64,000 bases of DNA from Ramazzottius varieornatus (lineage: Eukaryota > Animalia > Tardigrada). Position numbers and translations under genes: made by a program. The notes below the pieces were generated by a model. The model made no database searches. It saw nothing but the letters and a program-made list of their open reading frames with translations, and was not told the origin of the DNA. Shown piece by piece: positions 9,265-40,170 of the stretch. Each line of letters opens with the position of its first letter. The first letter of the stretch is position 1. Location: NCBI GenBank assembly GCA_001949185.1, contig BDGG01000006.1:2416671-2480670 (forward strand), given 5' to 3'.

Positions 9265-11245
9265 CTAAACCGATGAACCGTTATGTGAAGTTGAGAAGGA
9301 TTTCTGTTGATTATTAGCGCAACGTGTAGAGGTGGGGCAGAGCTCATTCAATCTGGCCGGGAAAACGCGGGCCGTTGCTTTTCTGTATCTTTCAACGGTA
9401 GCTACCCTTCCTAGCGAACTTCTTCGGTTTCGAAAGGGAAGCCGCAACAAGCGAGCACAGTTCTCGCGAAAATGTTCCAGGGACCAGGCGTAGATTAGGC
9501 AGTTGACCGAGCTATTGCCATGTGCTAAGAGGGCTGCCAGGATATACCACACAAAGCCAATGTGCGTCGCCTGACCTATGAGGAGCAGCATGCCAAGCGG
9601 CATGGACATAACGGCGAGCACAATGAAGACCCGGAACAGCACACGAACCATCCGTATCGTGCGGTGAAATTCTTTAAGCTTCATCTTTCGTCTTTCGTTC
9701 CGTCTGCTTCCGCTTACTGGCTGGCTGTTCGTGGAAGCACTACTAGTGCTTCGGTTCAGGATGCGGTTCCTGACCAGGTTGGAATTATGGACGCGACGAA
9801 AGATGGCGAAGTATGCGATACAGCTGACGCCGACCGGCATCATAATCCCGACGCCGATGTAGAAAAAAGCGTACGAGTGAATATGGTGGGCGAAGGTACA
9901 GACAAAGATGGCTTCCGAGAAATGGATTTCGCCCCAGCCGACGTGGTTGGGCAACGTGACGATGTAAATGAGAACCCAGACTGTCAGGCAGATGAGAAGG
10001 GAGTTGCGCTTAGTGTAAATTTTTTTGTATGAGTTGTACCGGCAGATGAAAACATATCTGGAAAAACATGAGCTATATTGCTTGATAATCTGGCAAGCGG
10101 TCTGGTCGGCCAGTCTATCATAACAGACGGGAACAACACGGTTCCCCTAGATTTTTAAATCAAAAGAGAGCCAGAAAGTACATCGGAGATGACCCCGGAT
10201 GTAAGGATGATTGTTATACGCTGATGAATTAGGCGGTATAAAAGCGGCATCGTTGAGTGAACTTGTCTGTTGTTTCTCGTGTTGCGTCAAGGAAAGGTCT
10301 GATTGAATTGCTAGAACGTTAGTCTTGCGTCAAGAAAACCTAGGGATGCGATCAGCGAACTAGTTTGACTACTCGTACACCTTGCTTCCTCTCACCTTGA
10401 GCAGCGGATAACAAGCCTTGGTCTACAGGCTTCAGGTCAAAACTTTCACCCACTCTCGTGAGCAGCTCGTCTCGAGCAAATTATGGGATGGAAAACAGCT
10501 GTATTCACCGACCACCGTCAAAAGAACTTTTACTGCTCTCGACCCTTCGAGCCGTATACGTAATAGAATTACTGAAATGTGTTGTCGTGTGCGAGAATTC
10601 GTCACCTCCGCTACGATGGCCGACTAACCTGTTAATGGTAATCATGCAGATGGTCCAAGTTGAAGCAATACAACCCATTGCGCACAGCGATCCAACAACT
10701 GCAAGGCGTATAAACCCGTTGCAGTGTACAGACCAAATATTAGTGTTGATGTAAAATTCTGTAAATGTCTTACGGCGGCATAGCAGAGGCCGTTCTTGAA
10801 ACCACCTTTCTCCGAGTAGCGCACCTACTCATGGTGAACGATCGTCATCAGACGGAGTTGCTGCGTCAAATGAATCATTCATATCTGGATTTTTACCTAA
10901 AGCGCTGAAAGGCTGGGTAATGACGGTAACGAATAGATCGGACACGGATAAGTTGATGATGAGGGCGTTGCTTGTGGTCCGAAGTACGGGTGAGGCACAG
11001 ATCGTCACAATGACCTTGAAAACTTGTCGATGTATCGTCAAATTCGTGCGGCTGTATGGCACATATATCAGACAAACCGTGCTTACCAGTACATTTCCCA
11101 AGGTTCCAAGGAAACTTTCAATTGTCAAAATGAACACGTAAAAGTACTGAAGGGAACGTTCCAGAGGTTGCCTGAGGAAGTTTGAAGATGTTTCATTCAG
11201 AGAAAATATGATGGACGTATCGTTGCAAAGCCCGTGGCAATCCAT
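9265..11245 (-). CDS. Class A GPCR of the melatonin-receptor/Tre1/moody type, 5 exons (~11245-11087, 11013-10897, 10824-10773, 10710-10629, 10059-9265)
   Basis: TM1 GTLGNVLVI, TM2 NLSVSDL, TM3 ITINR|YVFIC (NRY variant of DRY across an intron), TM5 YFAIF, TM7 HGNSSVNCLIY, helix 8 FRE. Confidence 0.85.
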
Positions 11246-14159: not shown

Positions 14160-17100
14160 ATACGTAAACCGATTCTGCCATGGACTCCATGATGTTAGGC
14201 AGAGGCGAAACGTCAATCTCGGATACGGCTTTCTTCGGCGACACGGACCTCGTTGTCACACTTAGTGGTAGAAGGACCGTGGAACTGTGTCCGCGGTTGG
14301 CGCTCTTTTCATTGTAGATGCTCTGTAATTTGGCCAGGTGCTGTGACGAAGAAAAGAAGAACCGTTACGGACCAGTACAAAAAAATAAATCAGTTGAGAG
14401 TACGGCAAACAAACTCAATAAGAGTTCAATAACAAATTTAAAGAAGAGTGGTTATCCAAAGCGGCGCACGTTTACACGGTTTACGGCTGGAGACGTGCGC
14501 TGCTTGGAAAGACGGATAAGGTTGTTTTCCCAAGTGGCGCACGTTTGCTAACCAGAAATCCAAAGCGCCAGTTGAAAAAAAACCAGTTTCGTCGAGTTTG
14601 TTCGCCTACTATTCAATTTTAAGAGGGAAAACTCACATCAAGGTTAGGCGCGTATGATTCAGCATATCGATTCAAGATATTCTTCATGCTCAACGCTAAC
14701 GTCCGGTTGCCTTCAAGGATGGTATGGCATTTGAAATTTTCCACAAAAACAAAGTCTTCTGTGACGAACAAAGATTCTGCTTCCATCAGGCTCTTGTCAG
14801 TGATGAAGTTCTTCATGGCGGCGTAGACGTCACCACACACCGCCGGTCTCCAGCCTAGCTCCTGAGCTGAGGGCATGATCTTTGAAACAATTAGGTTCAC
14901 CCAAGTCTTCTCCATCTTTTGCAGTTCTTCAGGTAAAGGATAGAAGTTGGTGGTCTTCTTGACGATGGCCGAAAGCTTTGGATGCCTTCTGTCGACTTTG
15001 GCAAATGCCATGCCGATACCTTCGTCAACATAGTGAACCTGGAAGAAGACGCCCGAGTATTCTTTCTATTTAATTTTTATTTGATTTCTATTCTTTCTAT
15101 TTATTTTTTTATTTAATCTTATTTCATTTTATTTACATTCTAATTATTTTGTTGTATTTCCTTTTATTTTGACTTACGTGGAGAAAGTCTTCGTCGATTT
15201 CCGTGAGGACTTCCACCCTGTACATTTTTGTGCTATCGTTGCTCAGCATGCCGCAGATGAGACCTGGTGGGGGTACTTCGGCGAGCGGCGCAGGAAGTTC
15301 GTCCAAGACGTTGGCGAGGTGTTCATCGATGGCCTTGGTGCTGCGGTCCACTTGGACGATCTGTCCTTCGGCTGTCCTGTAGCTGACGATCCGCACGATG
15401 AAGTGTGTCGGGTTGAGGAAGCGCATGATGGAGAACTCGAAACCTCTACCGGCAGCTAGGGCAGTCGGTAATGCTCGAGGCGGACCTTGGTAGTGTCGAT
15501 ACGCGCAAGATTCTGGACTCATACACTCACCCACGTACATCTGCAAGCGCCACACCAAAATGTTATGCTTACTCCAAAACTCCAAAAAATTTGATCTTGT
15601 ACATCGGCAAACAACCTCGACAAGATCGGTTTCCCAAGTCGCGCACGTTTCCGATGTTACTGGGCGGCGGAGTGCACCACTCCAAATACCGATCTTGTCG
15701 AATCTCTTCAAGTGACGCAGCATTCATTATTATTGGCTGAAGGCGTGAGCCACTCGGGAAGCGATCTTGTCAAGTTGGTACATTTAGGTCCCACCACCAA
15801 AAAAATTTAGATTACCTGTTGAAGGCAGGGAGGAACTCGAAGGAAGTCTGGATCCTCCAAAGCAGCCAGACTTTTCGTTATAAGGCTTTCTGGCATGACA
15901 CTTTGGGGAGAAGCGGAAGCAACGTGAACCAGAAGCGGAAGTAGGTGGCGCCACGATTCGTCGACGATAATGCGGCAGGGAATGGCTGGATAAGGCGGCT
16001 TGCTCGCGCCTGAACAGAAAACACCGATCATCAACCGAACTAACTTAAATTTTAATCTGAAGTAAGCTAAGGGAAATGGTAAGCTTACCGTGCGCGAGTT
16101 TGTTTAGGTATTGGTAGTGCGTGGACCAAATCATGAAGTTGTTCTTAATGAGGCAGAAGCGCCGCATGAAGTGGTGGATGGATTCCGGTGGGGAAAGGTG
16201 GACGATGAGATCGGCGTCGTTAATGCCAAAGTCCGACGTAATGCTGTCAGGAATAGCCAGAATCTTCGCGGCTTCCTTATTCTCCGTCTTCCACCAGTCC
16301 CGAATGGTGGAAACGTATTCGTAAACCGGCTTGTCCTCGTTGGCTGTCTGAAAGCCACAAAAGAGGCGTTCGGACCAGTTTCAATCCAGATTTGCATAGC
16401 TTAGACGTCGGAAAATAAATTCCGCCAGATCGATTTACGAGTGGCGCACGCTCTCAGCCAACAACAATGCCAACGTGCGCCACTTGCGATAACGATCTGG
16501 TTCAACTCTTTGCTTCATTACCATGAAATCGTATTTCGTCTTGGATTTTTCCTTATCCATCAGCAGAGCTTTCCTAATGGCACCGGCTTGCTCAGATGAT
16601 TTCACAAAAAGTACGATGCGATCGCCGTTAGTCCTGTCGGAGAAGGTCTTGAGTGCTGACAGGGCCCACGGCAGATTGGGGTTGGCTTCGAGGATCTCGA
16701 CGGGGAGTTTCTCGTAGATGATGGCGTCCAGCATGTTGGTGATGACGGTGCAACAGGTATTCTCCAGCTTGCTCAGGACCTGCTTGATGTTTGGCGAAGG
16801 CGAAGATGCAGCAAAGACGTAGTTGATGTCGGGGTTGACCACGAAGCGTGTCATCATTTGCTCCACGATCGTCGGAGCGAAGCGGAGCATCACGTCGATG
16901 TTTCTCAAAACGACAAACTCAACCTACAGAAACAATCATTCATCTATAATCTCGTCCGTAGAACCTCCTTTTACGTCTTCAACACTTTTTAGAATTCACA
17001 GATCGTCCCCGATTGGTTTTGCGGGTTTTACGGATTTTGTTTGTTCTTCGTCTTTCTTCTACAGATTTTTCTGTGTTGTATTCTTCGTACGTTTCTTGTA

Positions 17101-18345
17101 TTTTTCCTGTGTTGATGCTGAGCACACTGTTTATGATTTTTCGTTCTGGTTTTCGTACTTTTAAGACGTTGATGGGTGGAGATCCAAGGCGTCCTTGCGT
17201 CAAGAACAACTGCATAACCGCATTGAGCGTCACAATCAAGACATCACAGTTCTCCGACGCCGCGTACGACTTTTCTTGGAAGCCTTTATCGTTCTTGCTT
17301 TCGAAAAAGTTGACGATACGGAAAGAGCGACTAAGCTGTTGTGTGACAGTTCGCATGGACTCGACCAGCGCCATCGACTCTTCCAGGTTGCAGGTGACAA
17401 CGACGGCCAAAGGTCCTTCGCTGTACAATCGGCCAAGGTGACGCCTTCCGCACGGTTCGGCAATGCGAAGGAGTAAAGGCACCACGAAGCCCGAGTCCAT
17501 TGTGTTGGAGTATTCGGCAGGAGGTTGGCAGGAATAGAGTGGGTTGTCGATATAGAAGACGTCGTACCTGGAAACAGAGAGAACAATTTTAGCGCACTTG
17601 AGCCCAGAAGCAACTGCGCAACTGCGTGACGTCAGAAAACACCGCCGAAGCTGCACGTAAGACGAATGGTTTGTACATGGACGGCCCAACTGGGTTAAAT
17701 GATCAGCTCGTAGGGCTGCTCCGTTGATTGACCAAGCCTTGATTGAATGTTGACGTTTTCACCGCTTTCGGCTTTTCTTTTGAAATTCGTATAGTTTCTT
17801 CGAACTCGTTGGTCTCACCTGTGGAGAACATGGGGCCAAATCAAAGCTTGCATCTCTGTCCGCCGGGGTCCACAAAGGCTGGTGACGAGAGGTCGGACCA
17901 GATCGTTGAGAGGGAGAGCGCCGGAGCGGAGTTGGGTCCTCCAGGGTAAAGTGGCCAAACCAGAAAAATACATCCGGGAGTGTTGGCCGAATAAAGTCGT
18001 CTCATCTTCGCACAACTGTAGGGGCTGTCGCTGTTCTAATATACCGACCATGGTCGAAAGCTGCAAGTTGGGTAAGGACAGAAATATCCGTTAGTATCAA
18101 GCGGGGAATTTTTCCACCAATTTGGAAACAGATTTCAGTACTGTACCTTCTGCCGGCTGATCGTGGACTTTATCTAGGACAGTTACTATGCGAACTATGG
18201 CCACCTCTACGAGTCTCCTTGAGCGCCGACCTGGTGGGAAACAACCTCCGAACCAAACGGCACAGAACTTTATCGAGGAGGATGTGGCCATGTGGGGCAT
18301 GATGCCATGATGAGAAACTTACTTTTGAGTTCTGAGAATACTATA
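14160..18345 (-). CDS. TDRD12: TDRD12/Yb-family protein: degenerate DEAD-box helicase domain plus extended Tudor domain (piRNA pathway); multi-exon; ends uncertain, 5' part probably continues beyond 26185
   Basis: Q-motif MQALIWPHVLHR|YDVFYI; GPLAVVVTC; CDVLIVT; motif II read as VVLRNID; ALGINDADLIVHLSPPESIHHFMRRF; IMRFLNPTHFIVRI; Tudor GLICG...YRVEVL...VHYVDEG; PLPEELQ...IVSKIMPSAQELGW; NLD|HLAKL. This order and these motifs match TDRD12/SoYb as I recall them. Confidence 0.75.
14404..14608. repeat. Intronic palindrome family, double unit
   Basis: Arms GGCGCACGTTT...ACGTGCGC and CCCAAGTGGCGCACGTTT...GCGCCAGTTG...TCGAGTTTGTT. Confidence 0.75.
15605..15710. repeat. Intronic palindrome family
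   Basis: CTCGACAAGATCGGTTTCCCAAGTCGCGCACG...GTGCACCACT...CCGATCTTGTCGA. Confidence 0.75.
16424..16505. repeat. Intronic palindrome family
   Basis: CCAGATCG...AGTGGCGCACG...CGTGCGCCACT...CGATCTGG. Confidence 0.8.
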
Positions 18346-26636: not shown

Positions 26637-29600
26637 TTAAACTTTAGCGCCACCATCTTTTCCCACTGGCAAGATAGTTGGTAGAGGCTCGTCCGACATG
26701 AAAATCCTAGGTGCGACTCCCATGCTCATCAGCTCTTGGAAAAGGAGCTTACACGAGTACGGAAGGACGACTTGAGACACCTAAACATAAAGGAAAACAA
26801 CCAGATTGACATTCCCGGAAAAAGATCCCTTCCGGTTGCCGTCAAGACTTTAACACCTTTTTCGCTAACTTACGCCATGTTTTCTTCGGCAGCCTTTACA
26901 CTCAAAGGTGTTCGTCTTGAGTTTGGCAATACATATCAGTCCGCATTTATTACAAACATGGACTCTGGCGGCATCTGAGCAGTCCATGAAACGTTCTCGG
27001 AGGTTCAGCGAAGCGCCATGACTGATCAAGCAATCACGCTCCATTTCTCCTACTCGCAGTCCACCACCCCTAAAACCGAGCAACCACATCATCAACCTGC
27101 TACCAGATGATTCGAGCGCTGATTTAATGATTCATTTACATGGCGCGGCCTTCTTGTGGCTGGCGAGTCAAGACGTTCACGGCGCCGCGGTTCCTCGAGT
27201 ATATCTTGTCGTCCACCAGATGCTTGAGTCGCTGGTAGTACGTCGGACCGATGAAGATGGGCGAACTGAGCTTGACGCCAGTGTGGCCATTCAGCATGAG
27301 TTCGTTACCAAAGGCCTCAAAGTTCTTCTCGCGGAGTACCGCAGCGATTTTACCAACTTTATCTGGGACGTGGGCCACGCTTGGGTCGATTGGCTGGTTC
27401 GTGAGATCGACCGTGGAGAAAGGCGTGCCGTACCCATCATCATCACCGGTCAGGGCAGCTGCCTACGACGAGCAAACCAAATTTTTCGTCTGAAAATGTT
27501 CAGAAAATTTCGACCGAATAATTATTTGCTGTTCGACTTTCCAAGACATTTAGAATCCAATTATGGTTTTTTCCCCAAAACAGTAAAGAGTACGACCGGA
27601 AAACAATGAAATGGGAGTTGGGCAAGCTCGACAAAGATGGTTTACCCAAATGGCGCACGTCCCTCTTGCTATTGACTGGAAACGTGCGGCACTTGAAGAA
27701 CGACCCTGTCGAGCTTTTCGCTGGTCCCAAATATAAACGAAGTTCCGGAAGATTATCCTTACCTTGCCAGAGATACACTCCATTAAGTGACCAATGGTCA
27801 TGCGAGAGGGGATGGCGTGAGGGTTGATGATTATATCGGGGATGATTCCATTGGCAGTGAAGGGCATATCCTGAAATGAAGACTTGTTTGAACAAATAAG
27901 GCAAAAGAAAACACTGTTGTGTAAAAAAATACTATTGTAATTCATACGCGGAAAATAGAGGATGCTTCACCTCGGCTGGGTAGATGATGCCGACTGTTCC
28001 TTTCTGGCCGTGCCGACTAGCAAACTTATCGCCCATCACGGGGACCCTCACCGACCGGACGCGGACCTTGCAGAACCGTTCCTGGTCAGGCGAGTCGGTG
28101 ATCATCACTCGGTCGATGTGGCCCGTTTCCGCCGAGCGCATCTTTACGCTCAAGTCTACTTTCTTTTCTCTTCGATCACCTTGCACCTGCATCGTAAGTA
28201 ACACCATCAAGGTACATCGAAGACAAAGTCAACCTGAAGATTTGCTTCCGAGGGAGAAAAACGAATATCTTACAAAATTGTCAGCCACCGTAACGACAGC
28301 CGTTTTTCCGATCAGGATATCGTCGCCAGAGACACGCGACCCTAGTTCGACGATGCCATCGTCGTCCAGCTTCGCATAGGCGGTATCTTCACACGAAACC
28401 CTGTCTTCTATTGTGAGCTTCTTGAAGTCCAGCTTCCCGATTTCTTCCTGTTTTCTGAACCGGCTATCCTGTGCCTCTATCGCCGAATACGTCCGGTAGC
28501 GAGTATGGCGGAACAACCCTGCAATCGAAATCACCGATCGGAACCCATCCCATAAACTACCATCCACCCACCGGGCCGGAAAGCCGGCCGGACGTCATTC
28601 CCCTAATGGGGATACTTGTTTCCAAATTTCTTTCGAACACTCTTCAATTTTTGTGCTCTGTTCAACGTAAATAAACCCGACGAAAAAGTTCGAAGAAAAT
28701 ACATTCCCAGGTGGCTCAGGTTTTCCGTGTTACTGGCTGCAAGCGTGTGCCGCTTAAGCAAACACATCCAACAAGATTGCTCACGCCAGTGGCGCACTTT
28801 CTCAGTGTTATTGGCCGAATGTGTGCGCGTTGGAAAAACGATCTTGCCAAGTTTGTTCGGCTAAGTTACGTCTCAATTTTTGCATTCAGAAAACCTCAGA
28901 AAACATAGAATCTCGATACCTCGCTGAACAGCCGCTTGGTTGAGAATGACCGAGTCTTCTTGGTTGTACCCGGTGTAGCTCGCGATGGCGACAATGCAGT
29001 TGATACCCGCCGGCAGCTCGTCGAACTTCAACACACCGTGCATCATGGCGTTGGTCGTCACCAGAGGCCTACAACGAAGGAAAAGCGATCCAGGTTAGCC
29101 AAGAACTTCTCATACGAGCGAGCTGGAGCAACTTACTTTTGGGGGTAGTAGAGGACGTGGCAGTCGCTGTCCATCCTCTCGTTAAAGTTGGTGGAGTAGA
29201 CGCCCAGCGACTGTTTGCCCATACCGGCTTGGTAGGTGTTTCGGGGCGACTGGTTGTGGTTAGAGAAGGGAATGATGGAAGCTGCGACGCCGAGGATCAT
29301 GGAAGGGTGGATCTCGCAGTGGGTATACTTGACCGTAGCGTTGACATCGCCGATCTTTCTTCGACGGTTGTTGGGGAGGAGGTCGCGCGGATGCATGGCG
29401 ATCATAGCAGTTTCTTCTTCGGAGACGTCGAGGTATTCGATCATACCGGTCGTCAGCAACTCTTTCCACCTACAAAAAGTGAATCCGTTAATTTAGTTCC
29501 AATAAACAAGGTAAACCGGAGGCAGGCGAAAAATTTCGGGACGATCCTTATCTCATCAGATGCCGCACGTTTCTAGCCAATAACATGGAAACCCGCGCCA

Positions 29601-32600
29601 CTTGAGACTACAACCATCCCAAGATTGTTTCTCGTCCTCCGATATTCACTCAGAAAAAAACTCTGAAAAATTAGATTTAATTATGTTCAGGCTGACAAGT
29701 CATCGTTTCTCGCTACCCGTAATTTGGAGAGGCTTCTTCGAGAATTCCCATCTGGAAAAATGGAAGACCAAGGATGATTTTGACGGCAAGCTCAGCGTTG
29801 CCTCAGAAGTTCGTCCGCAAAGATCAGATGTTATGGTGTGACAGTTCGACTTACCTCCAGTCGTTTGATACTGAGCGCCTGCCTTTCTTCGTCGACTATC
29901 AGCAACGGTCGGCAAACCCGGCCAGCATCCGTGAAGATACGTACTTCTCTAGACCACAAGTTTCGCGAGACCGAAATCTGTAACAGACAAAATCATCCAA
30001 GCAAATCGCTTTCCACATTCCTATCCACACTCACCTCGTATTCCGAAATGTTTCTTCCGCTAGTTCGTCTTCTCAACTGCAGGAGCCTGACCAAATTTGT
30101 CGGTTTAGTCGTCATTCCCACCCACGAACCATTAACTATCACCTTCGTCAACCTATCAACAGCTAATCAGCTTACATCAAGCACAGAAGTAAAAATGATG
30201 AACACAAAGAAAACATCTTTTAGCTCGACAAACAAACTCGACAAGATTGTGTTCTCAAGTAGCGCACGGTTCCGAAACTATTAGCTGGAAACGTGCGCCA
30301 ATTGCAAGAAGAAGGTCGTCAAATCTGTTTGCTTAGGTCCCAAATTACAACTAAAAAGTAAAAGAAGAAACAAAAACCAAAATTAACATTGGTGATTTTG
30401 AAACTCACGTCAAAAGATATTCGGGATCAAAATCCGCCATGGGAGAGAAGTAGTCTTCGATGCTGTCCAGGAACTCTTGCAGCGGCGTACTACCCACAGT
30501 TACGTAGGCCATCAGCGCCAGGTTCTTCACCAAGCCACAGGACATGCCTTCCGGAGTCTCGGAAGGACACACAATGCCCCACTGTGTGTTGTGGAGCATT
30601 CGTGGAGGTGCCAGCCGTGTATCCGGGTTGACGGGTGTGTGCAGCCGTCGTAAGTGAGAGAGAGTCGACAGGTACGTCAACCTGCTCAAGTTCTGCGTGA
30701 TGCCTGAAAGATACCAAAGCGGTAGAATATCAAAAGAAAGGTGTCAAAAGAAATTCGGTGATACTGTTTCATAGTTCGTGCCTGTCAGGGATTCGCCACT
30801 GTAACCCCGGTCGTTCCAGTTGCCCGTACTGAGAGCATACATCAGTCCGTCCGTGATGGTTCGACTTCGGATAGTCACTCCCAAATCGAATTTGGTATTA
30901 CGACGGTTGATGTGTCTCTGCACAGTCATCTTCATCTCACGAACCTGGAAAGTACAGAGAAGCATCAAATAAAAATTAAGCAGAGCAATGATTGGCAAAA
31001 AGGTTATCGAGTTTTATTATAGAGCTCGACAGTTCCTTTTCTCCAAGTGGCGCGCAAATTCGGCCAACAACACTGCGAATGTGCACCACTTTGGAAAGCA
31101 ACTTCGCAAGATCGTTTTCCAAAGTGGCGCCCGTCTTACAGTCAATAACACTTGAGACGCGCGTCACTTGAAGAAACGACCCTGTCAAGTTTGTTTGTCT
31201 AACCCAACTTTCGTTCAATTATTCGCATTTCCTTCTCCCATTTGGCTTACCATTCTGGTGAAAAGTCTTCGGAAGACCGTACGAAGCAGCGGTCCAGCCA
31301 AATCGACTCTCTTGTTCCCGTAGTGGTCCCTGTCATCGACGGCTCTCCATCCCAGGACCGTCGCCAGCAGCTGATGGACCATGTAGCCCAACAGCCACCG
31401 CTTCTTGTCAGCTGAGTTGTCGTCCAGTCCAACGTGAGGGAAGACGTCTCGGCGAATGATTTCCCTCGCGAATCTGATCCTCTCTTTCCTTGCAGCACCC
31501 GGCGCTGCTGCTCGGTTACCGATGAAGTTCAGTGCCAGCTCTTGCGTCCTGAAGAGCTCGCCGTCGACCAGCGAAGGCTGAAACAGGGTCCGCTCTTCTT
31601 GGTCATGAGGATTGCGGGTACTCGGAACGATGCGGTCGAGGATACTTCCGTCCTCCTCCAGACCCAGCGCGCGAAAGACGATCGCGACGGGGATGGGATG
31701 GCGAACGTTGGGAAGAATGGCCACGACAGACCTACCCAAGTTCACTTCCCAGCCGGTCATCTACCAACGAAAACCCGTCAAATCACCCAGAGTATTACCC
31801 CATGACAGGTAAACGCGAAAAAAAAACTGGCTAAGACCGACGCACAAAATCAGGAAACAAAATCCAACCAGCCGCATACAAAGAATGCCCAAATTCGCTG
31901 ATGTAATAGAATGCACATACATAACACAGAGACGCTCACCGATCCAATCACACAGGTCGAACAGAAATGAGTCAAGAATTCTTACATCGATGTTTTTCTT
32001 TGGACGATGGATGTGTAGTGATAGTTTGCAAGGTGGCCGGGATGAGTTGGTGACCACCGAGGAGAACTCGGCGCTGTATTCATATTTCTTGATGGTTGAA
32101 TGGTGGACGTAGATCTGGTTAGGTGCCATTCTTTCTTGGGCGATGACTACCTGCATGCAAACCGATTGTTAGAGCTGCATAAGTCCAACAGGGAGTGAAA
32201 AGGTACCTTTTCACAGCCGTTGATGATGAAGTAGCCGCCAGGATCCAGCGGACATTCCTTGAGCTCAGCTAGTCCCTGTCGGCCTTTGACAGCTCGGCTA
32301 TTCAGCAAGCAAAACTTGGACCTGACCATCACCGGCACTTTACCCAAGTACACTTTCCCGTAGTGTCTTCTCTCTATCTTGTTGTTCCTGTCAATCGTCT
32401 GGCTGATGTCAACGTAGATCGCCGAAGAGTAAGTCAGGTTGCGCAGTCGAGAGTCTTGTGGAGGGGAAACCACCGTTTCGGTCCCAGCTTCAAAGACAAT
32501 ATAATTCAGATTTTTCCCCCTCATTTTACAGTCCTCATCACTCCTTATGAACTGAAGTAAACTAGTTCAAAATATCGCTTGACCAACACAAATCCAATTC

Positions 32601-33591
32601 ATAAAAGAATTACAGTAATAAAGTAGGAAAAGTGGAAAAAATCCTGGACTTTCTGGTTCTCCTACCTTCCCAATTTTGAGGCTTGGACAGGTACACTTGC
32701 CCGAACTTCCATGTGACAGTTATCTGAAATAATTCGAACCATATCTTTACACGACAGCCGAATTACGGCAGGACAAGTTACGAGCGGAATTGTGGTAACA
32801 GTACAGTAGTATGTAAAAGGCGTTACCGTCTTACCGGTTGCTCGTCGTGTTTGAGCTTCTTGTAGTCCAGCTCCTGGACTACCGTCACCGCTGGAAATTC
32901 GTCGTCGACAATCCTCTGGATATCATGCTCTAGAAAAGTATCGAAGGAATCGAGCTGCTGCCTGACCAGGCCGCGCTCGGCGAAGTGGCTGCCGACGATG
33001 TGCCATGCTATCCTGTCGTATTCTTCCGGTGAGATGTCGCTCTGTACGTAGCGCTGACGCCGGGTTTCTTCGTCAAGCTCTTCTTCTTCTGGATCAGCTA
33101 CAGTTCCAGATTCTCCTCTGGCATCTAAAATGAAAACCGCAAACTTAGCCTGCGAATGAGAAGCTGAAACTCTGCGCGAAAGCTCAAAACAAACCGAAGT
33201 CACTCAAGTCCAGTAAACCACTTCCAGCCAAATGGACCGAGGAGCATCCCATGGCCCACCACAAAACGCAAACAACGCGCAAGCAGGCCGTAAGTTTGAC
33301 CCATGTGGTCCAGTCAGACCACGACGAGCAATCAATGAAAATTCCGCAAATTTTCTCTTCAGGTTACTTCGGACAATGGACAAGGTAGGAAGCTTAAGAA
33401 AACATACCCGCTGGAGCAAGAGGCTTTCCGTAACGATACAGGTTCTCCAAGTCCGGAGGGAGCTGAAGATCGGCAGGCAGAGGAGGGACAGGATGGTTGA
33501 GCGGCGGCAGACGAGTGTTCGGCACTGCTCCTTCGTCAGGTGACGAGTCTGGCGGTGAAGGCTCCGTAAGGCTGATTTCCTGATCCTCCAT
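26637..33591 (-). CDS. RPB2: Diverged paralog of the RNA polymerase II second-largest subunit (RPB2/POLR2B-like), about 19 exons, apparently intact
   Basis: [187 protein letters not shown], Zn site CNKC...[18 protein letters not shown]. Stop at 26637; probable ATG at 33591 (MEDQEIS...). Confidence 0.93.
27621..27722. repeat. Intronic palindrome family
   Basis: AAGCTCGACA...AATGGCGCACGT...ACGTGCGGCACTT...TGTCGAGCTT. Confidence 0.8.
28670..28862. repeat. Intronic palindrome family, double unit
   Basis: CAAGATTG...CAGTGGCGCAC...GTGTGCGC...CGATCTTGCCAAGTTTGTT. Confidence 0.7.
29520..29630. repeat. Intronic palindrome family
   Basis: GCCGCACGTTTCTAG...TGGAAACCCGCGCCACTTGAGA. Confidence 0.65.
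30230..30332. repeat. Intronic palindrome family
   Basis: ACAAACTCGACAAGATTG...AAGTAGCGCACGGTTCC...GGAAACGTGCGCCAATTG. Confidence 0.8.
31022..31200. repeat. Intronic palindrome family, double unit
   Basis: CCAAGTGGCGCGCA...TGTGCACCACTTTGG and AAAGTGGCGC...GCGCGTCACTTGAAGAAACGACCCTGTCAAGTTTGTT. Confidence 0.8.
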
Positions 33592-34112
33592 GGAATTATT
33601 TGCCCGAACACTTGCCCCATGATTCCGATCTACCAAGAAAGAAATCAACAAAGAAGTACGAAGCAAGCCGCAGCAAATCCCAACCATCAATGAATTTAAA
33701 TTCCAGACTTACATTCCGCTTCGTCTTGGCCGCACAAAAAAGCAGCATCTTCCACCAACTCTTCGTCGTCGCTTTGAGCAGAGGTAACCCGGTCCATTGT
33801 CTGTAACATGGACAGAATTTTCGTCATTGAGATAAGCAGAGATCACAAATTCGGGCCAAATCCATCCAGAAATCAAGGAACCAGTCGTTCGCTCTCGTCA
33901 ACCACGACAACTCATAACCATCCCCAGGCTCTTCCAGACTCTCATGGATACGCACATGATGTCAGTCAAACAGAACGGCAGGTGAGACGGAGACACCATG
34001 GACATGTAAATTCATCACGCATTGTTTGTCAGAAGGGAAATTTTGGCTGCGAGAGTTGTGCCGGTGCGTTTTGAACAATGCGCATTGTGAAAACAAAAAC
34101 AGGTGATGCGCC

Positions 34113-38929: not shown

Positions 38930-40170
38930 GGTACAATCCCTTCTGAAAGAAAGCGTCTCATCAGTGATCTAGAAGAATGGGAGGTCAGACGGAAACTCAT
39001 GAAGCTGAACCTAGACCTTGCCGAAGCGGAGGAGGAGAAGGATGGAGCAGACATCGCGACCGTGCTGCTACAACTTATTTGCGCCACTCGATATCTCCAC
39101 CGACCCGAAGTCCTCAAGAGCACCCACTTTGTCCAGTATGTACTACCATTACTTGATGACGAACGCTTCAAACAAGGAGTCAGGATGTCCCGAGACGTGT
39201 TCGAGAGGATTCTGGGAAGAATCAGCGACCACAACGTGTTTCATCAGCATAGAAAAACACCTCAAGCTGACCCACGACTGCAACTTATGATCACCGCTTA
39301 CTGTTTCGGAAGCTCGGGGAGCTCTGCGTTGCTGGGAAAGATAGCTAGGCGCTTCGGTGTTTCAGAGGGATTCGTTGGTCTATGTACTTCCAGGTGCATT
39401 GAAGCTTTACTGTCGTTATAGACAAGCGAGGTGACCTGGCCGAACAAAAACGAAAGGACCTCCATCAAAGTAAGTACATTTATCGTTTCACAATTCTGAA
39501 ATTTTTTATTCCTACTCATGATTTTTTTCTGCAACAGGCACGTGTTTTGGCTGATTCGGGATTTCCTGACTGTGTCGGAATGCTGGACGGCACGCTGATT
39601 CCACAGGAGTACAAGCCGAAGAAAGACGAAGACTACTGGAGCCATAAGAGCCGTTATGGAATATCGGGTATGATTGTTTGTGACGATAAACGTAAGATCC
39701 GTTACGTTTTCGTTGGATTCTGCGGCTCGGTTCATGACATGAGGGTCTACAGTAACGCTCGTCTGGCAAGTTTGACTTCGAAGCTCTTCACAACTGGCGA
39801 GTACCTGCTGGCTGATAGCGCCTACACCACGTCGGCCGTTACCGTCTCATCATACAAGAGACCTTCCTCACTGGTGGAAGATAATGAGCAATTCAATTTT
39901 TACCTTGCGTCCATACGAATTCGAGTTAAGCATGCCATAGGAATACCGAAAGGTCATTTCCCTTCTCTACAGTCTCTCAGAATCAAAATTTTCGACAAAG
40001 AAACCCATGAAAGAGCTGTCAGGTGGATCAAAGCTTGCGTTGTGCTGCATAATATGTTACTCAAAGACAGCTATTTTGACAGCAGCTGGACAAAATATCG
40101 AGAGCGTATCACATCAGACTCGCCGCAAGAGTGTGCAACAGTCGATGGGAAAAGTTTCGAGACAGCGTAA
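38930..40170 (+). pseudogene. Harbinger DDE transposase (HARBI1-like), 2 exons, stop at 39419
   Basis: FKQGVRMSRDVF, HTH IARRFGVSEG, GFPDCVGMLDGTLI, GSVHDMRVY, LLADSAY, ACVVLHNML; intron ~39470-39537. Confidence 0.9.

What the first reader, a model, noticed from the sequence alone, without database searches (positions are those of the whole stretch)
26637..33591. Intact but highly diverged RPB2 paralog: candidate specialised animal RNA polymerase II variant
Seen: a full-length spliced RPB2 with catalytic motifs kept ([36 protein letters not shown], Zn ribbon) and no stop noticed in the exons I read. Known: animal RPB2 is normally single-copy and near-invariant, whereas plants duplicated it into NRPD2/NRPE2 for silencing polymerases IV/V. 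Here whole segments look only about half identical, by eye, to remembered metazoan RPB2 (e.g. [29 protein letters not shown] vs [28 protein letters not shown]). The motifs are Pol II-type, not RPA2 or RPC2. Inference: a second, neofunctionalised Pol II subunit, possibly germline- or silencing-specific.
Basis: partly seen in the sequence, partly recalled or inferred. Interest (0 to 1): 0.9.

Follow-up and report, generated by a model that had tools for sequence, protein, structure and literature searches.

The report
Expressed diverged RPB2 paralog in tardigrade

Summary
The minus-strand gene at window 26637-33827 has 20 coding exons and encodes 1362 aa. It is locus RvY_11843 of Ramazzottius varieornatus. 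It carries all seven Rpb2 domains and intact catalytic motifs.

- **Expression:** spliced 4.3-4.6 kb transcripts occur in runs from four studies.
- **Paralog status:** the same genome has a canonical RPB2 (RvY_04994, 81% identical to mammalian RPB2). The window gene is 52% identical to it. Nine of the canonical gene's 13 mapped introns match in position and phase.
- **A second diverged paralog:** RvY_11811 lies 93 kb away. Paramacrobiotus has a related, truncated diverged copy.
- **Partners:** only three largest-subunit genes exist, so there is no dedicated RPB1 partner.
- **Constraint:** strain differences give pN/pS of about 0.15. The paralog keeps 94% of residues invariant across eukaryotic RPB2.

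The most likely role is an alternative second-largest subunit that swaps into a Pol II core. A germline or silencing role is untested. I found no paper on it.

The scan had already noted this stretch in overlapping windows (s1-794187) and the sister paralog on other DNA (s1-794940).

The parts
26637..33827 (-). Coding region of RvY_11843 (GAV01076.1, UniProt A0A1D1VJV2), 1362 aa in 20 coding exons. Exons: 33713-33827, 33408-33629, 32835-33124, 32666-32723, 32207-32487, 31986-32150, 31251-31760, 30782-30944, 30409-30703, 30035-30152, 29855-29977, 29717-29751, 29137-29469, 28920-29068, 28274-28518, 27971-28186, 27763-27870, 27140-27462, 26874-27069, 26637-26780.
   Evidence: Fifteen introns come from RNA contig joints and two more from the contigs' loose ends placed on the window. 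The two 3'-most introns come from homology and GT/AG sites. The joined frame equals database protein P0154 exactly.
33825..33827 (-). Start codon: the first in-frame ATG, six codons after an upstream stop
26637..26639 (-). Stop codon
33042..33827 (-). N-terminal extension of about 125-140 aa, absent from canonical RPB2. It is rich in acidic residues and proline and contains a PPLP motif. It spans two introns.
30852..32972 (-). Rpb2_1 (protrusion) with Rpb2_2 (lobe, 31302-31733) nested inside it. These are among the most diverged conserved-domain parts: 38-54% identical to the canonical copy.
30501..30695 (-). Rpb2_3 fork domain, 68% identical overall. The fork loop 1 stretch (30594-30641) has 7 of 13 metazoan-invariant residues changed.
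29304..30142 (-). Rpb2_4 (29891-30142) and Rpb2_5 (29304-29468) external domains
27142..29282 (-). Rpb2_6 hybrid-binding and wall domain. It holds [14 protein letters not shown] (29229-29270; P to S and D to N at universally invariant sites), GYNQEDS (28951-28971), [12 protein letters not shown] (27998-28033), [10 protein letters not shown] (27796-27825) and a 13-aa insertion (27358-27396).
26697..27065 (-). Rpb2_7 anchor and clamp domain with an intact four-cysteine Zn ribbon (CNKCG at 26940-26954, CKGC at 26889-26900)
26640..26696 (-). C-terminal tail of 19 aa beyond the end of canonical RPB2
30704..30781 (-). The only GC..AG intron; the other 18 are GT..AG

Best explanation
RvY_11843 is a functional, fast-evolved paralog of the Pol II second-largest subunit in the tardigrade Ramazzottius varieornatus. 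It arose by DNA-level duplication of an intron-bearing RPB2 gene, most likely within the tardigrade lineage. It belongs to a small set of diverged copies: itself, RvY_11811 93 kb away, and a truncated relative in Paramacrobiotus. Shown: it is intact, spliced, expressed and under purifying selection. It keeps the active-site and RPB1-proximal core, namely the metal-B ED pair, the GDKF..RHGQKG lysines, the PSRMT motif and the Zn ribbon. Its lobe, protrusion, external domains, the linker before the fork and fork loop 1 are heavily changed. It has gained an acidic, proline-rich N-terminal tail. Inferred: because the genome has only one RPB1 (and one each of RPB3, an RPB11-type gene and SPT5), the protein most likely replaces canonical RPB2 in a Pol II core built on the shared subunits. 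That would give a variant Pol II with normal catalysis but different factor-binding surfaces and different handling of the upstream end of the hybrid. Which genes or conditions it serves is unknown.
For: - **Intact and expressed:** a 1362-aa ORF across 20 exons, identical to the GenBank model. One spliced 4.3-4.6 kb contig in each of 4 runs from 4 studies.
- **Domain content:** all seven Rpb2 Pfam domains in order.
- **Pol II-type:** PDB bit scores are mammalian RPB2 1278, S. pombe 1119, yeast 1081, archaeal 754, RPC2 683, NRPD2/E2 580, RPA2 359.
- **A canonical RPB2 exists elsewhere:** RvY_04994 on contig C2 is 81% identical to mammal.
- **Gene duplication, not retrocopy:** 9 of the canonical gene's 13 mapped introns are shared in position and phase.
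- **Core retained:** the paralog keeps 143 of 152 columns invariant in 34 eukaryotic RPB2s, but only 73% of 577 metazoan-invariant columns. In the catalytic stretch, canonical aa 951-1000, 1 of 34 invariant columns is changed.
- **Purifying selection:** strain differences are 10 synonymous to 5 nonsynonymous, pN/pS 0.15, binomial p 4.5e-4.
- **No dedicated partners:** only three Rpb1-type genes, one Spt5-NGN, two RPB11/AC19-type and one RPB3.
- **Shared history of the diverged copies:** the two Ramazzottius paralogs and the Paramacrobiotus copy share derived residues and cluster in trees.
Against: - No direct evidence that it binds RPB1 or is part of any polymerase.
- Expression level and stage or tissue pattern are unknown, because contigs cannot rank expression.
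- Two universally invariant residues next to the active-site region are changed (PFPDHNQ to PFSNHNQ), and fork loop 1 is rewritten, so catalysis could be impaired or altered.
- No ortholog was seen in Hypsibius exemplaris, though the search design could have hidden one.
- Tree placement is unresolved because the branch is roughly 30 times longer than canonical ones.
- The Paramacrobiotus relative lacks the catalytic C-terminal half, so at least some members of this group are not polymerase subunits, or that model is incomplete.
Confidence: 0.6

Rival explanations
1. The paralog no longer works as a polymerase subunit. It has a transcription-independent role, such as RNA or dsRNA binding or chaperoning. 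This was proposed for the development-specific Rpb2 paralog of the ciliate Oxytricha.
For: - No dedicated largest subunit exists.
- Nucleic-acid-facing fork loop 1 and the linker before the fork are heavily substituted.
- There is a new, probably disordered N-terminal tail.
- A related tardigrade copy (P0017) lacks the catalytic half altogether.
- The Oxytricha precedent is described in PMC5312943, citing Khurana et al. 2014.
Against: - Residues needed only for catalysis and for assembly with RPB1 are kept under selection: 94% of universal invariants, and 33 of 34 invariant columns around GDKF..PSRMT.
- The ED pair and the Zn ribbon are intact.
- The authors of PMC5312943 themselves consider a direct transcriptional role more parsimonious for the ciliate paralog.
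Confidence: 0.2
2. It is the second-largest subunit of a dedicated silencing or germline polymerase analogous to plant Pol IV/V, functionally tied to small-RNA pathways.
For: - Plants show that RPB2 duplication can found silencing polymerases.
- The downstream neighbour has weak Tudor-like and DEAD-box-like signals: Atlas score 0.79-0.83 and PRP28 at E 0.6.
- Tardigrades have lineage-specific Dicer expansions, going by the title and abstract of PMC12505628.
Against: - No extra RPB1, SPT5, RPB3 or RPB11 gene.
- It is far closer to RPB2 than to NRPD2.
- The neighbour's identity is not established: Pfam finds nothing at E<=1 and the AF2 model has pLDDT 31.
- Gene adjacency is weak evidence in animals.
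- The transcript assembles from whole-animal runs of four studies, so it is not obviously restricted.
Confidence: 0.15
3. It is a decaying or functionless duplicate that merely remains transcribed.
For: The branch is extremely long (2.6-4.3 substitutions per site against about 0.1 for canonical RPB2). About 27% of metazoan-invariant residues are changed.
Against: - No stop or frameshift in 4089 nt across 20 exons, and all 19 introns keep canonical splice sites.
- pN/pS is 0.15.
- Universal invariants are retained.
- Relatives of the diverged lineage exist in a second tardigrade family.
Confidence: 0.04
4. It is the only RPB2 of a generally fast-evolving genome, or a contaminant or horizontally acquired gene.
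For: None found.
Against: - Canonical RvY_04994 is present and 81% identical to mammal.
- The gene lies inside a 2.48 Mb tardigrade contig.
- It has 19 spliceosomal introns, 9 shared with the canonical copy.
Confidence: 0.01

Closest known systems
Canonical metazoan RPB2 / POLR2B (here RvY_04994; structures such as 5FLM chain B)
   Same: Same seven-domain architecture, same catalytic motifs and Zn ribbon. It is the best database match (1278 bits), and 9 intron positions and phases are shared with the tardigrade's own RPB2.
   Different: Only 52% identical, whereas animal RPB2s are about 80-88% identical to each other. 27% of metazoan-invariant residues are changed. It has a 125-140 aa N-terminal extension, a 13-aa insertion and a 19-aa C-terminal tail. 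It is a second (in fact one of three) RPB2-type gene in the genome.
Plant NRPD2/NRPE2 (shared second-largest subunit of Pol IV and Pol V; 7EU0, 8HIL chain B)
   Same: A diverged duplicate of RPB2 that keeps the catalytic core while the peripheral surfaces change, and that coexists with canonical RPB2.
   Different: Not the same clade (580 bits against 1278 for RPB2). Plants also have dedicated largest subunits (NRPD1/NRPE1) and an SPT5-like factor. This genome has only three Rpb1-type genes and one Spt5-NGN.
Development-specific Rpb2 paralog of Oxytricha trifallax (Khurana et al. 2014, as described in PMC5312943)
   Same: A lineage-specific RPB2 duplicate in a non-plant eukaryote, with possible specialised or non-canonical function.
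   Different: In Oxytricha, RPB1, RPB4, RPB7, RPB10, RPB11 and SPT5 are also duplicated (PMC5312943). Here only RPB2 (and possibly RPAC1) is. Stage-specific expression and dsRNA binding are not tested here. This is an independent origin in an animal.

Membership tests
[quoted passage not shown] | All seven Rpb2 domains (Pfam Rpb2_1 to Rpb2_7) in canonical order | tested here: met
   all seven families are above their cut-offs, from Rpb2_1 at aa 164-578 (with Rpb2_2 nested in it) to Rpb2_7 at aa 1252-1343.
[quoted passage not shown] | Closer to Pol II subunits than to Pol I, Pol III, Pol IV/V or archaeal homologs | tested here: met
   RPB2 scores 1081-1278 bits, against archaeal 754, RPC2 683, NRPD2 580 and RPA2 359.
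[quoted passage not shown] | Active-site motifs (ED of GYNQEDS, GDKFxSRHGQKG, PSRMT) and the four-Cys clamp Zn ribbon | tested here: met
   One of 34 metazoan-invariant columns in canonical aa 951-1000 is changed. Exception: PFPDHNQ has become PFSNHNQ.
[quoted passage not shown] | Being the organism's single-copy, near-invariant ortholog (about 80% or more identical among animals) | tested here: not met
   It is 52% identical to animal RPB2s. The ortholog is RvY_04994, at 81% to mammal. The window gene is therefore a paralog.
[quoted passage not shown] | Physical assembly with RPB1, RPB3, RPB10, RPB11 and RPB12 | not testable with these tools
   Needs IP-MS or reconstitution.
Plant-type Pol IV/V second-largest subunit (NRPD2/NRPE2) | Membership of the NRPD2 clade | tested here: not met
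   (580 bits against 1278). In trees it sits with or beside metazoan RPB2.
Plant-type Pol IV/V second-largest subunit (NRPD2/NRPE2) | Coexistence with dedicated largest-subunit paralogs and an SPT5-like factor | tested here: not met
   Only three Rpb1_2 and Rpb1_5 loci and one Spt5-NGN locus.
Ciliate-type developmental Rpb2 paralog | Stage-restricted expression and dsRNA binding | not testable with these tools
   Only assembled contigs were available; there are no raw reads or stage labels.

The most novel reading that the evidence does not exclude
Eutardigrades have evolved one or two additional nuclear RNA polymerases of the Pol II type. These share the single RPB1 and the small subunits but use dedicated second-largest subunits (RvY_11843 and RvY_11811). 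This would be an animal counterpart of an early stage of plant Pol IV/V evolution. Such enzymes might transcribe a special class of templates, such as transposon or small-RNA precursor loci, or genes needed in embryos or during recovery from desiccation.
Probability: 0.3. Interest if true: 0.9.

Novelty: new variant of a known kind. Interest (0 to 1): 0.68.

Why it matters
Animal Pol II is treated as a single enzyme with one invariant second-largest subunit. An animal carries two old, expressed, selectively maintained RPB2 paralogs that keep the catalytic core, have remodelled the factor-binding lobe and protrusion surfaces, and have no partner RPB1. This suggests subunit swapping as a way to make specialised Pol II variants. 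It gives a tractable system for asking how new polymerases such as plant Pol IV/V begin, because RNAi works in tardigrades. It also matters practically: RPB2 is a standard single-copy phylogenetic marker, and these paralogs could mislead tardigrade phylogenies and orthology pipelines.

Tried and rejected
No interspecies dN/dS was possible.
- **Orthologs elsewhere.** The exhaustive representative search with the 170-aa exon found nothing closer than 49% apart from the gene itself. None of those hits is nearer to the paralogs than to canonical RPB2, except borderline P0017. The full-length search lists only canonical RPB2s at 49-51%. The metagenome scan found no relative. Cluster look-ups of ten more fragments gave no tardigrade names. 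An H. exemplaris ortholog was not seen but is not excluded, because only the top 120 hits are shown and there are length limits.
- **Clade-specific residue test for a within-tardigrade origin.** It was uninformative: the sites are saturated.
- **Careful tree search.** It did not finish in two 300-s runs, so quick PMSF trees were used.
- **Small-subunit counts by Pfam on raw DNA are insensitive.** RPB9 gave 0 hits and RPB7 gave 1 hit, so nothing can be said about RPB4, RPB7 or RPB9 paralogs.
- **TDRD12/Yb-like neighbour claimed by earlier notes.** Pfam is negative at E<=1. The Atlas gives Tudor at 0.79-0.83 only and no helicase support. PDB hits have E>=0.35. The AF2 single-sequence model is unusable, pLDDT 31.6.
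- **Claimed clustering of substitutions in fork loop 2 and switch 3.** Not supported: 1 of 10 and 7 of 20 invariant columns changed.
- **Complex prediction** was not run. A homolog of RPB2 would dock onto RPB1 by similarity alone, so a pass would not discriminate between readings.
- **Literature searches.** Searches for the locus tags and for tardigrade RPB2 paralogs found nothing.
Full report
**What is there.** Between window 26.6 and 33.8 kb, the minus strand carries a chain of ORF pieces. Ten pieces sampled along it match the Pfam Rpb2 domains in order.

The public-run search found 20 runs of one organism that hold about 0.24-0.50 of the sampled words of window:27100-33300. For the best holders this is roughly the exon share of that stretch.

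I laid the contigs of four runs from four studies on window:27700-33699, keeping to the 6,000-letter limit. In each run a single 4.3-4.6 kb contig lies on the locus in pieces, with 16 joints. After allowing for the ambiguity of the cut, 15 joints skip GT..AG introns on the minus strand and one skips a GC..AG intron at 30704-30781. Intron-less contigs cannot come from this genomic DNA, and the genome search found no second, intron-less copy. So the gene is transcribed and correctly spliced.

The contigs' loose ends, placed on the window, give two further introns (27463-27762 and 33630-33712). The two 3'-most introns lie outside the laid stretch. I placed them by homology and splice sites.

Joined inside a script only, the exons give an open frame of 1367 codons. 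The first ATG is at 33827 and the stop at 26637-26639.

A cluster look-up then showed that this is GenBank GAV01076.1, "hypothetical protein RvY_11843", of the tardigrade Ramazzottius varieornatus (UniProt A0A1D1VJV2, 1362 aa). My model is identical to it residue for residue.

The CDS runs on to 33827.

**A note on method.** I did not send my own joined exon model to any search tool. Exon-level searches were done by reference. Full-length searches used the database's own record, P0154. Joining was done only in scripts, for the frame check and local alignments.

**Is it a paralog?** Yes. A six-frame search of the whole 55.8 Mb assembly with Rpb2_6 finds five loci:
- one on contig C8 (likely RPA2);
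- one at C2:7.32 Mb (likely RPC2);
- one at C2:4.745 Mb;
- one at C6:2.350 Mb;
- the window gene at C6:2.444 Mb.

The C2:4.745 Mb gene is the canonical RPB2 (RvY_04994, P0163, 1195 aa). It is 81% identical to a mammalian RPB2 and 87.5% identical to that of Hypsibius exemplaris. For scale, mammal and sponge RPB2 are 83% identical.

The window protein is 51.9% identical to that canonical copy and 52.4% identical to mammal. It is about 50-51% identical to every animal RPB2 listed.

The C6:2.350 Mb gene, 93 kb away, is a second diverged paralog (RvY_11811, P0310). My HSP-based reconstruction of it is 55.9% identical to canonical RPB2 and 49.3% identical to the window gene.

**Which polymerase class?** Against all PDB chains, the full-length protein scores as follows:

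| Homolog | Bits |
|---|---|
| Mammalian RPB2 | 1278 |
| S. pombe RPB2 | 1119 |
| S. cerevisiae RPB2 | 1081 |
| Archaeal subunit B | 754 |
| RPC2 | 683 |
| Plant NRPD2/E2 | 580 |
| RPA2 | 359 |

It is therefore Pol II-type and animal-like.

**Origin.** Nine of the 13 mapped introns of the canonical tardigrade RPB2 are shared by the window gene at the same aligned residue and phase. A tenth lies within three residues. The window gene has 7-9 further introns of its own. So it arose by duplication of an intron-bearing gene. It is not a retrocopy, a contaminant or a transferred gene.

In PMSF (LG+C20) trees the two Ramazzottius paralogs join each other (SH-aLRT 83-94). Their branches are 2.6-3.5 substitutions per site, against about 0.1 for canonical animal RPB2. 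They sit unresolved at the base of the animal sequences, next to the tardigrade RPB2 clade.

With the other paralogs left out, the window protein still falls in that basal polytomy.

An AU test does not reject a clade made of both paralogs plus the three tardigrade RPB2s (delta lnL 2.29, p 0.18). That clade was named only after the first trees had been seen. A within-tardigrade origin is therefore compatible with the data but not shown.

Paramacrobiotus metropolitanus, from a different eutardigrade superfamily, has a canonical RPB2 and also a very diverged 605-aa "RPB2-like" protein (XP_055333556.1, P0017). That protein groups with the Ramazzottius paralogs. All three share the same derived residue at 4 metazoan-invariant columns. 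The alignment also shows shared local patterns, such as YQAGM with the window protein and RGL..HT in all three.

With the reconstructed copy of the second paralog, the two Ramazzottius paralogs change the same metazoan-invariant columns far more often than independence predicts (89 observed, 38.7 expected). They share the same new residue at 22 of them, against 12.7 ± 2.7 expected by chance. With the annotated protein P0310 the counts are 82 and 21.

The simplest reading is one old duplication before these tardigrade families split, followed by a further local duplication. Long-branch artefacts cannot be excluded.

**Is it functional?** Several results say yes.
- There is no stop or frameshift in 4089 nt.
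- The contigs of two runs (X9, X11) come from a slightly different strain. They differ from the window at 15 coding sites: 10 synonymous and 5 nonsynonymous. With 775 synonymous and 2534 nonsynonymous sites, this gives pN/pS 0.15 (binomial p 4.5e-4).
- Of 152 alignment columns invariant in 34 canonical eukaryotic RPB2s, the paralog keeps 143 (94%). Of 577 columns invariant in 26 animal RPB2s, it keeps 73%.
- The nine universal-invariant changes are mostly conservative (S204C, L357I, L417V, V480I, F582I, A748G). The exceptions are Y304P and the adjacent P735S and D736N, which turn [14 protein letters not shown] into [14 protein letters not shown].
- [29 protein letters not shown] and the four Zn-ribbon cysteines are intact. 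Around the catalytic lysines only 1 of 34 animal-invariant columns has changed.

**Where it has changed.** Identity to the canonical copy varies by region:

| Region | Identity to canonical |
|---|---|
| Fork domain | 68% |
| Anchor and clamp | 66% |
| Hybrid-binding and wall | 59% |
| Lobe | 45% |
| Second protrusion segment | 38% |
| Stretch between fork and external 1 | 34% |

The densest cluster of changes at invariant positions is the linker just before the fork (canonical aa 468-485). There 11 of 15 invariant columns are changed, which equals the 99th percentile of permutations.

Fork loop 1 is rewritten (7 of 13, uncorrected p 0.03), and it is rewritten in the second paralog too. Fork loop 2 (1 of 10) and switch 3 (7 of 20) are not enriched.

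The protein has also gained an acidic, proline-rich N-terminal extension of about 125-140 aa, a 13-aa insertion and a 19-aa C-terminal tail.

**Partners.** The genome has only three largest-subunit genes, by two independent Rpb1 domains. It has one Spt5-NGN locus, two RPB11/AC19-type loci and one RPB3. There is no sign of a dedicated partner set like that of plant Pol IV/V.

Counts for the smallest subunits are unreliable with this method.

**Most likely mechanism.** The conserved catalytic core and RPB1-facing regions are held under purifying selection. The outer surfaces are remodelled; in canonical Pol II the lobe and protrusion contact initiation and elongation factors (established knowledge, not tested here). 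No dedicated RPB1 exists.

Together these point to an alternative second-largest subunit that replaces RPB2 in a Pol II core built on shared subunits. I give this 0.6.

A non-polymerase role, like that proposed for the Oxytricha developmental Rpb2 paralog (PMC5312943), is the main rival at 0.2.

A silencing or germline polymerase is possible but untested (0.15).

Earlier notes (s1-794220, s1-789882) call the downstream neighbour TDRD12/Yb-like. My tests gave only weak hints:
- Pfam finds nothing at E<=1.
- The Atlas gives Tudor at 0.79-0.83.
- A DEAD-box helicase (PRP28) matches at E 0.6.
- The structure model is unusable.

A decaying duplicate (0.04), or "the only RPB2 of a fast genome" (0.01), is contradicted by the data.

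**Novelty.** The gene is annotated only as a hypothetical protein. Searches of the held literature for its locus tags, and for RPB2 together with tardigrades, found nothing on it.

Diverged RPB2 duplicates that found or join specialised polymerases are known in plants (NRPD2/NRPE2) and ciliates. I know of none described in animals (my own knowledge). I therefore class it as a new variant of a known kind.

Noticed in passing
G000:C6:2349165-2355450 (L015/L025), 93 kb from the window gene: A second intact-looking, highly diverged RPB2 paralog (RvY_11811, P0310, 1047 aa annotated). It keeps [24 protein letters not shown] and the Zn ribbon. It is closer to canonical RPB2 than to the window paralog: 55.9% against 49.3% for my reconstruction, and up to 58% for the annotated protein.
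   Followed up: partly
G000:C4:311792-312133 (L027) and G000:C1:3667988-3668101 (L029): Two RPAC1/AC40-like genes, the shared Pol I/III subunit, roughly half identical by eye. Only one RPB3-like gene exists (C4:1911409, L028). This is another possible polymerase-subunit duplication in this genome.
   Followed up: partly
Protein P0017 (XP_055333556.1, Paramacrobiotus metropolitanus): A 605-aa RPB2-like protein with a degraded fork region and no catalytic C-terminal half. It shares derived residues with the Ramazzottius paralogs. It is unclear whether the gene is truncated or the annotation is incomplete.
   Followed up: partly
window 14619-17689, minus strand (ORFs 15133-15723, 16435-16908, 16979-17689): The gene downstream of the RPB2 paralog, which earlier notes call TDRD12/Yb-like. 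Only weak Tudor-like (Atlas 0.79-0.83) and DEAD-box-like (PRP28, E 0.6) hints were found, and Pfam is negative. Identity not established.
   Followed up: partly
window 39547-40170 (+): An ORF with a clear DDE_Tnp_4 (PIF/Harbinger-type) transposase domain, E 3e-28.
   Followed up: no
window 9265-9954 (-): An ORF matching the C-terminal half of a rhodopsin-family GPCR (7tm_1, E 5e-10).
   Followed up: no
window 27814-33597: Contigs of runs X9 and X11 carry 15 coding differences from the assembly. A low-depth X9 contig adds 3 intronic ones. Exon ORFs P0001 and P0155, from another run, differ at 7 of 275 residues. So several strains or close species carry this gene.
   Followed up: partly
Protein P0160 (Priapulus caudatus RPB2 model, 1774 aa): The model contains a partial tandem repeat of RPB2 (aa 1-600 and 609-1764, 82-87% identical to mammal). 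It is probably an assembly or annotation artefact.
   Followed up: no
G000, five loci (C5:644693, C1:5243286, C5:2348029, C4:1137640, C3:1888084): Five TFIIS-type Zn-ribbon loci, where four (TFIIS, RPB9, RPA12, RPC11) are the minimum expected. Not examined further.
   Followed up: no
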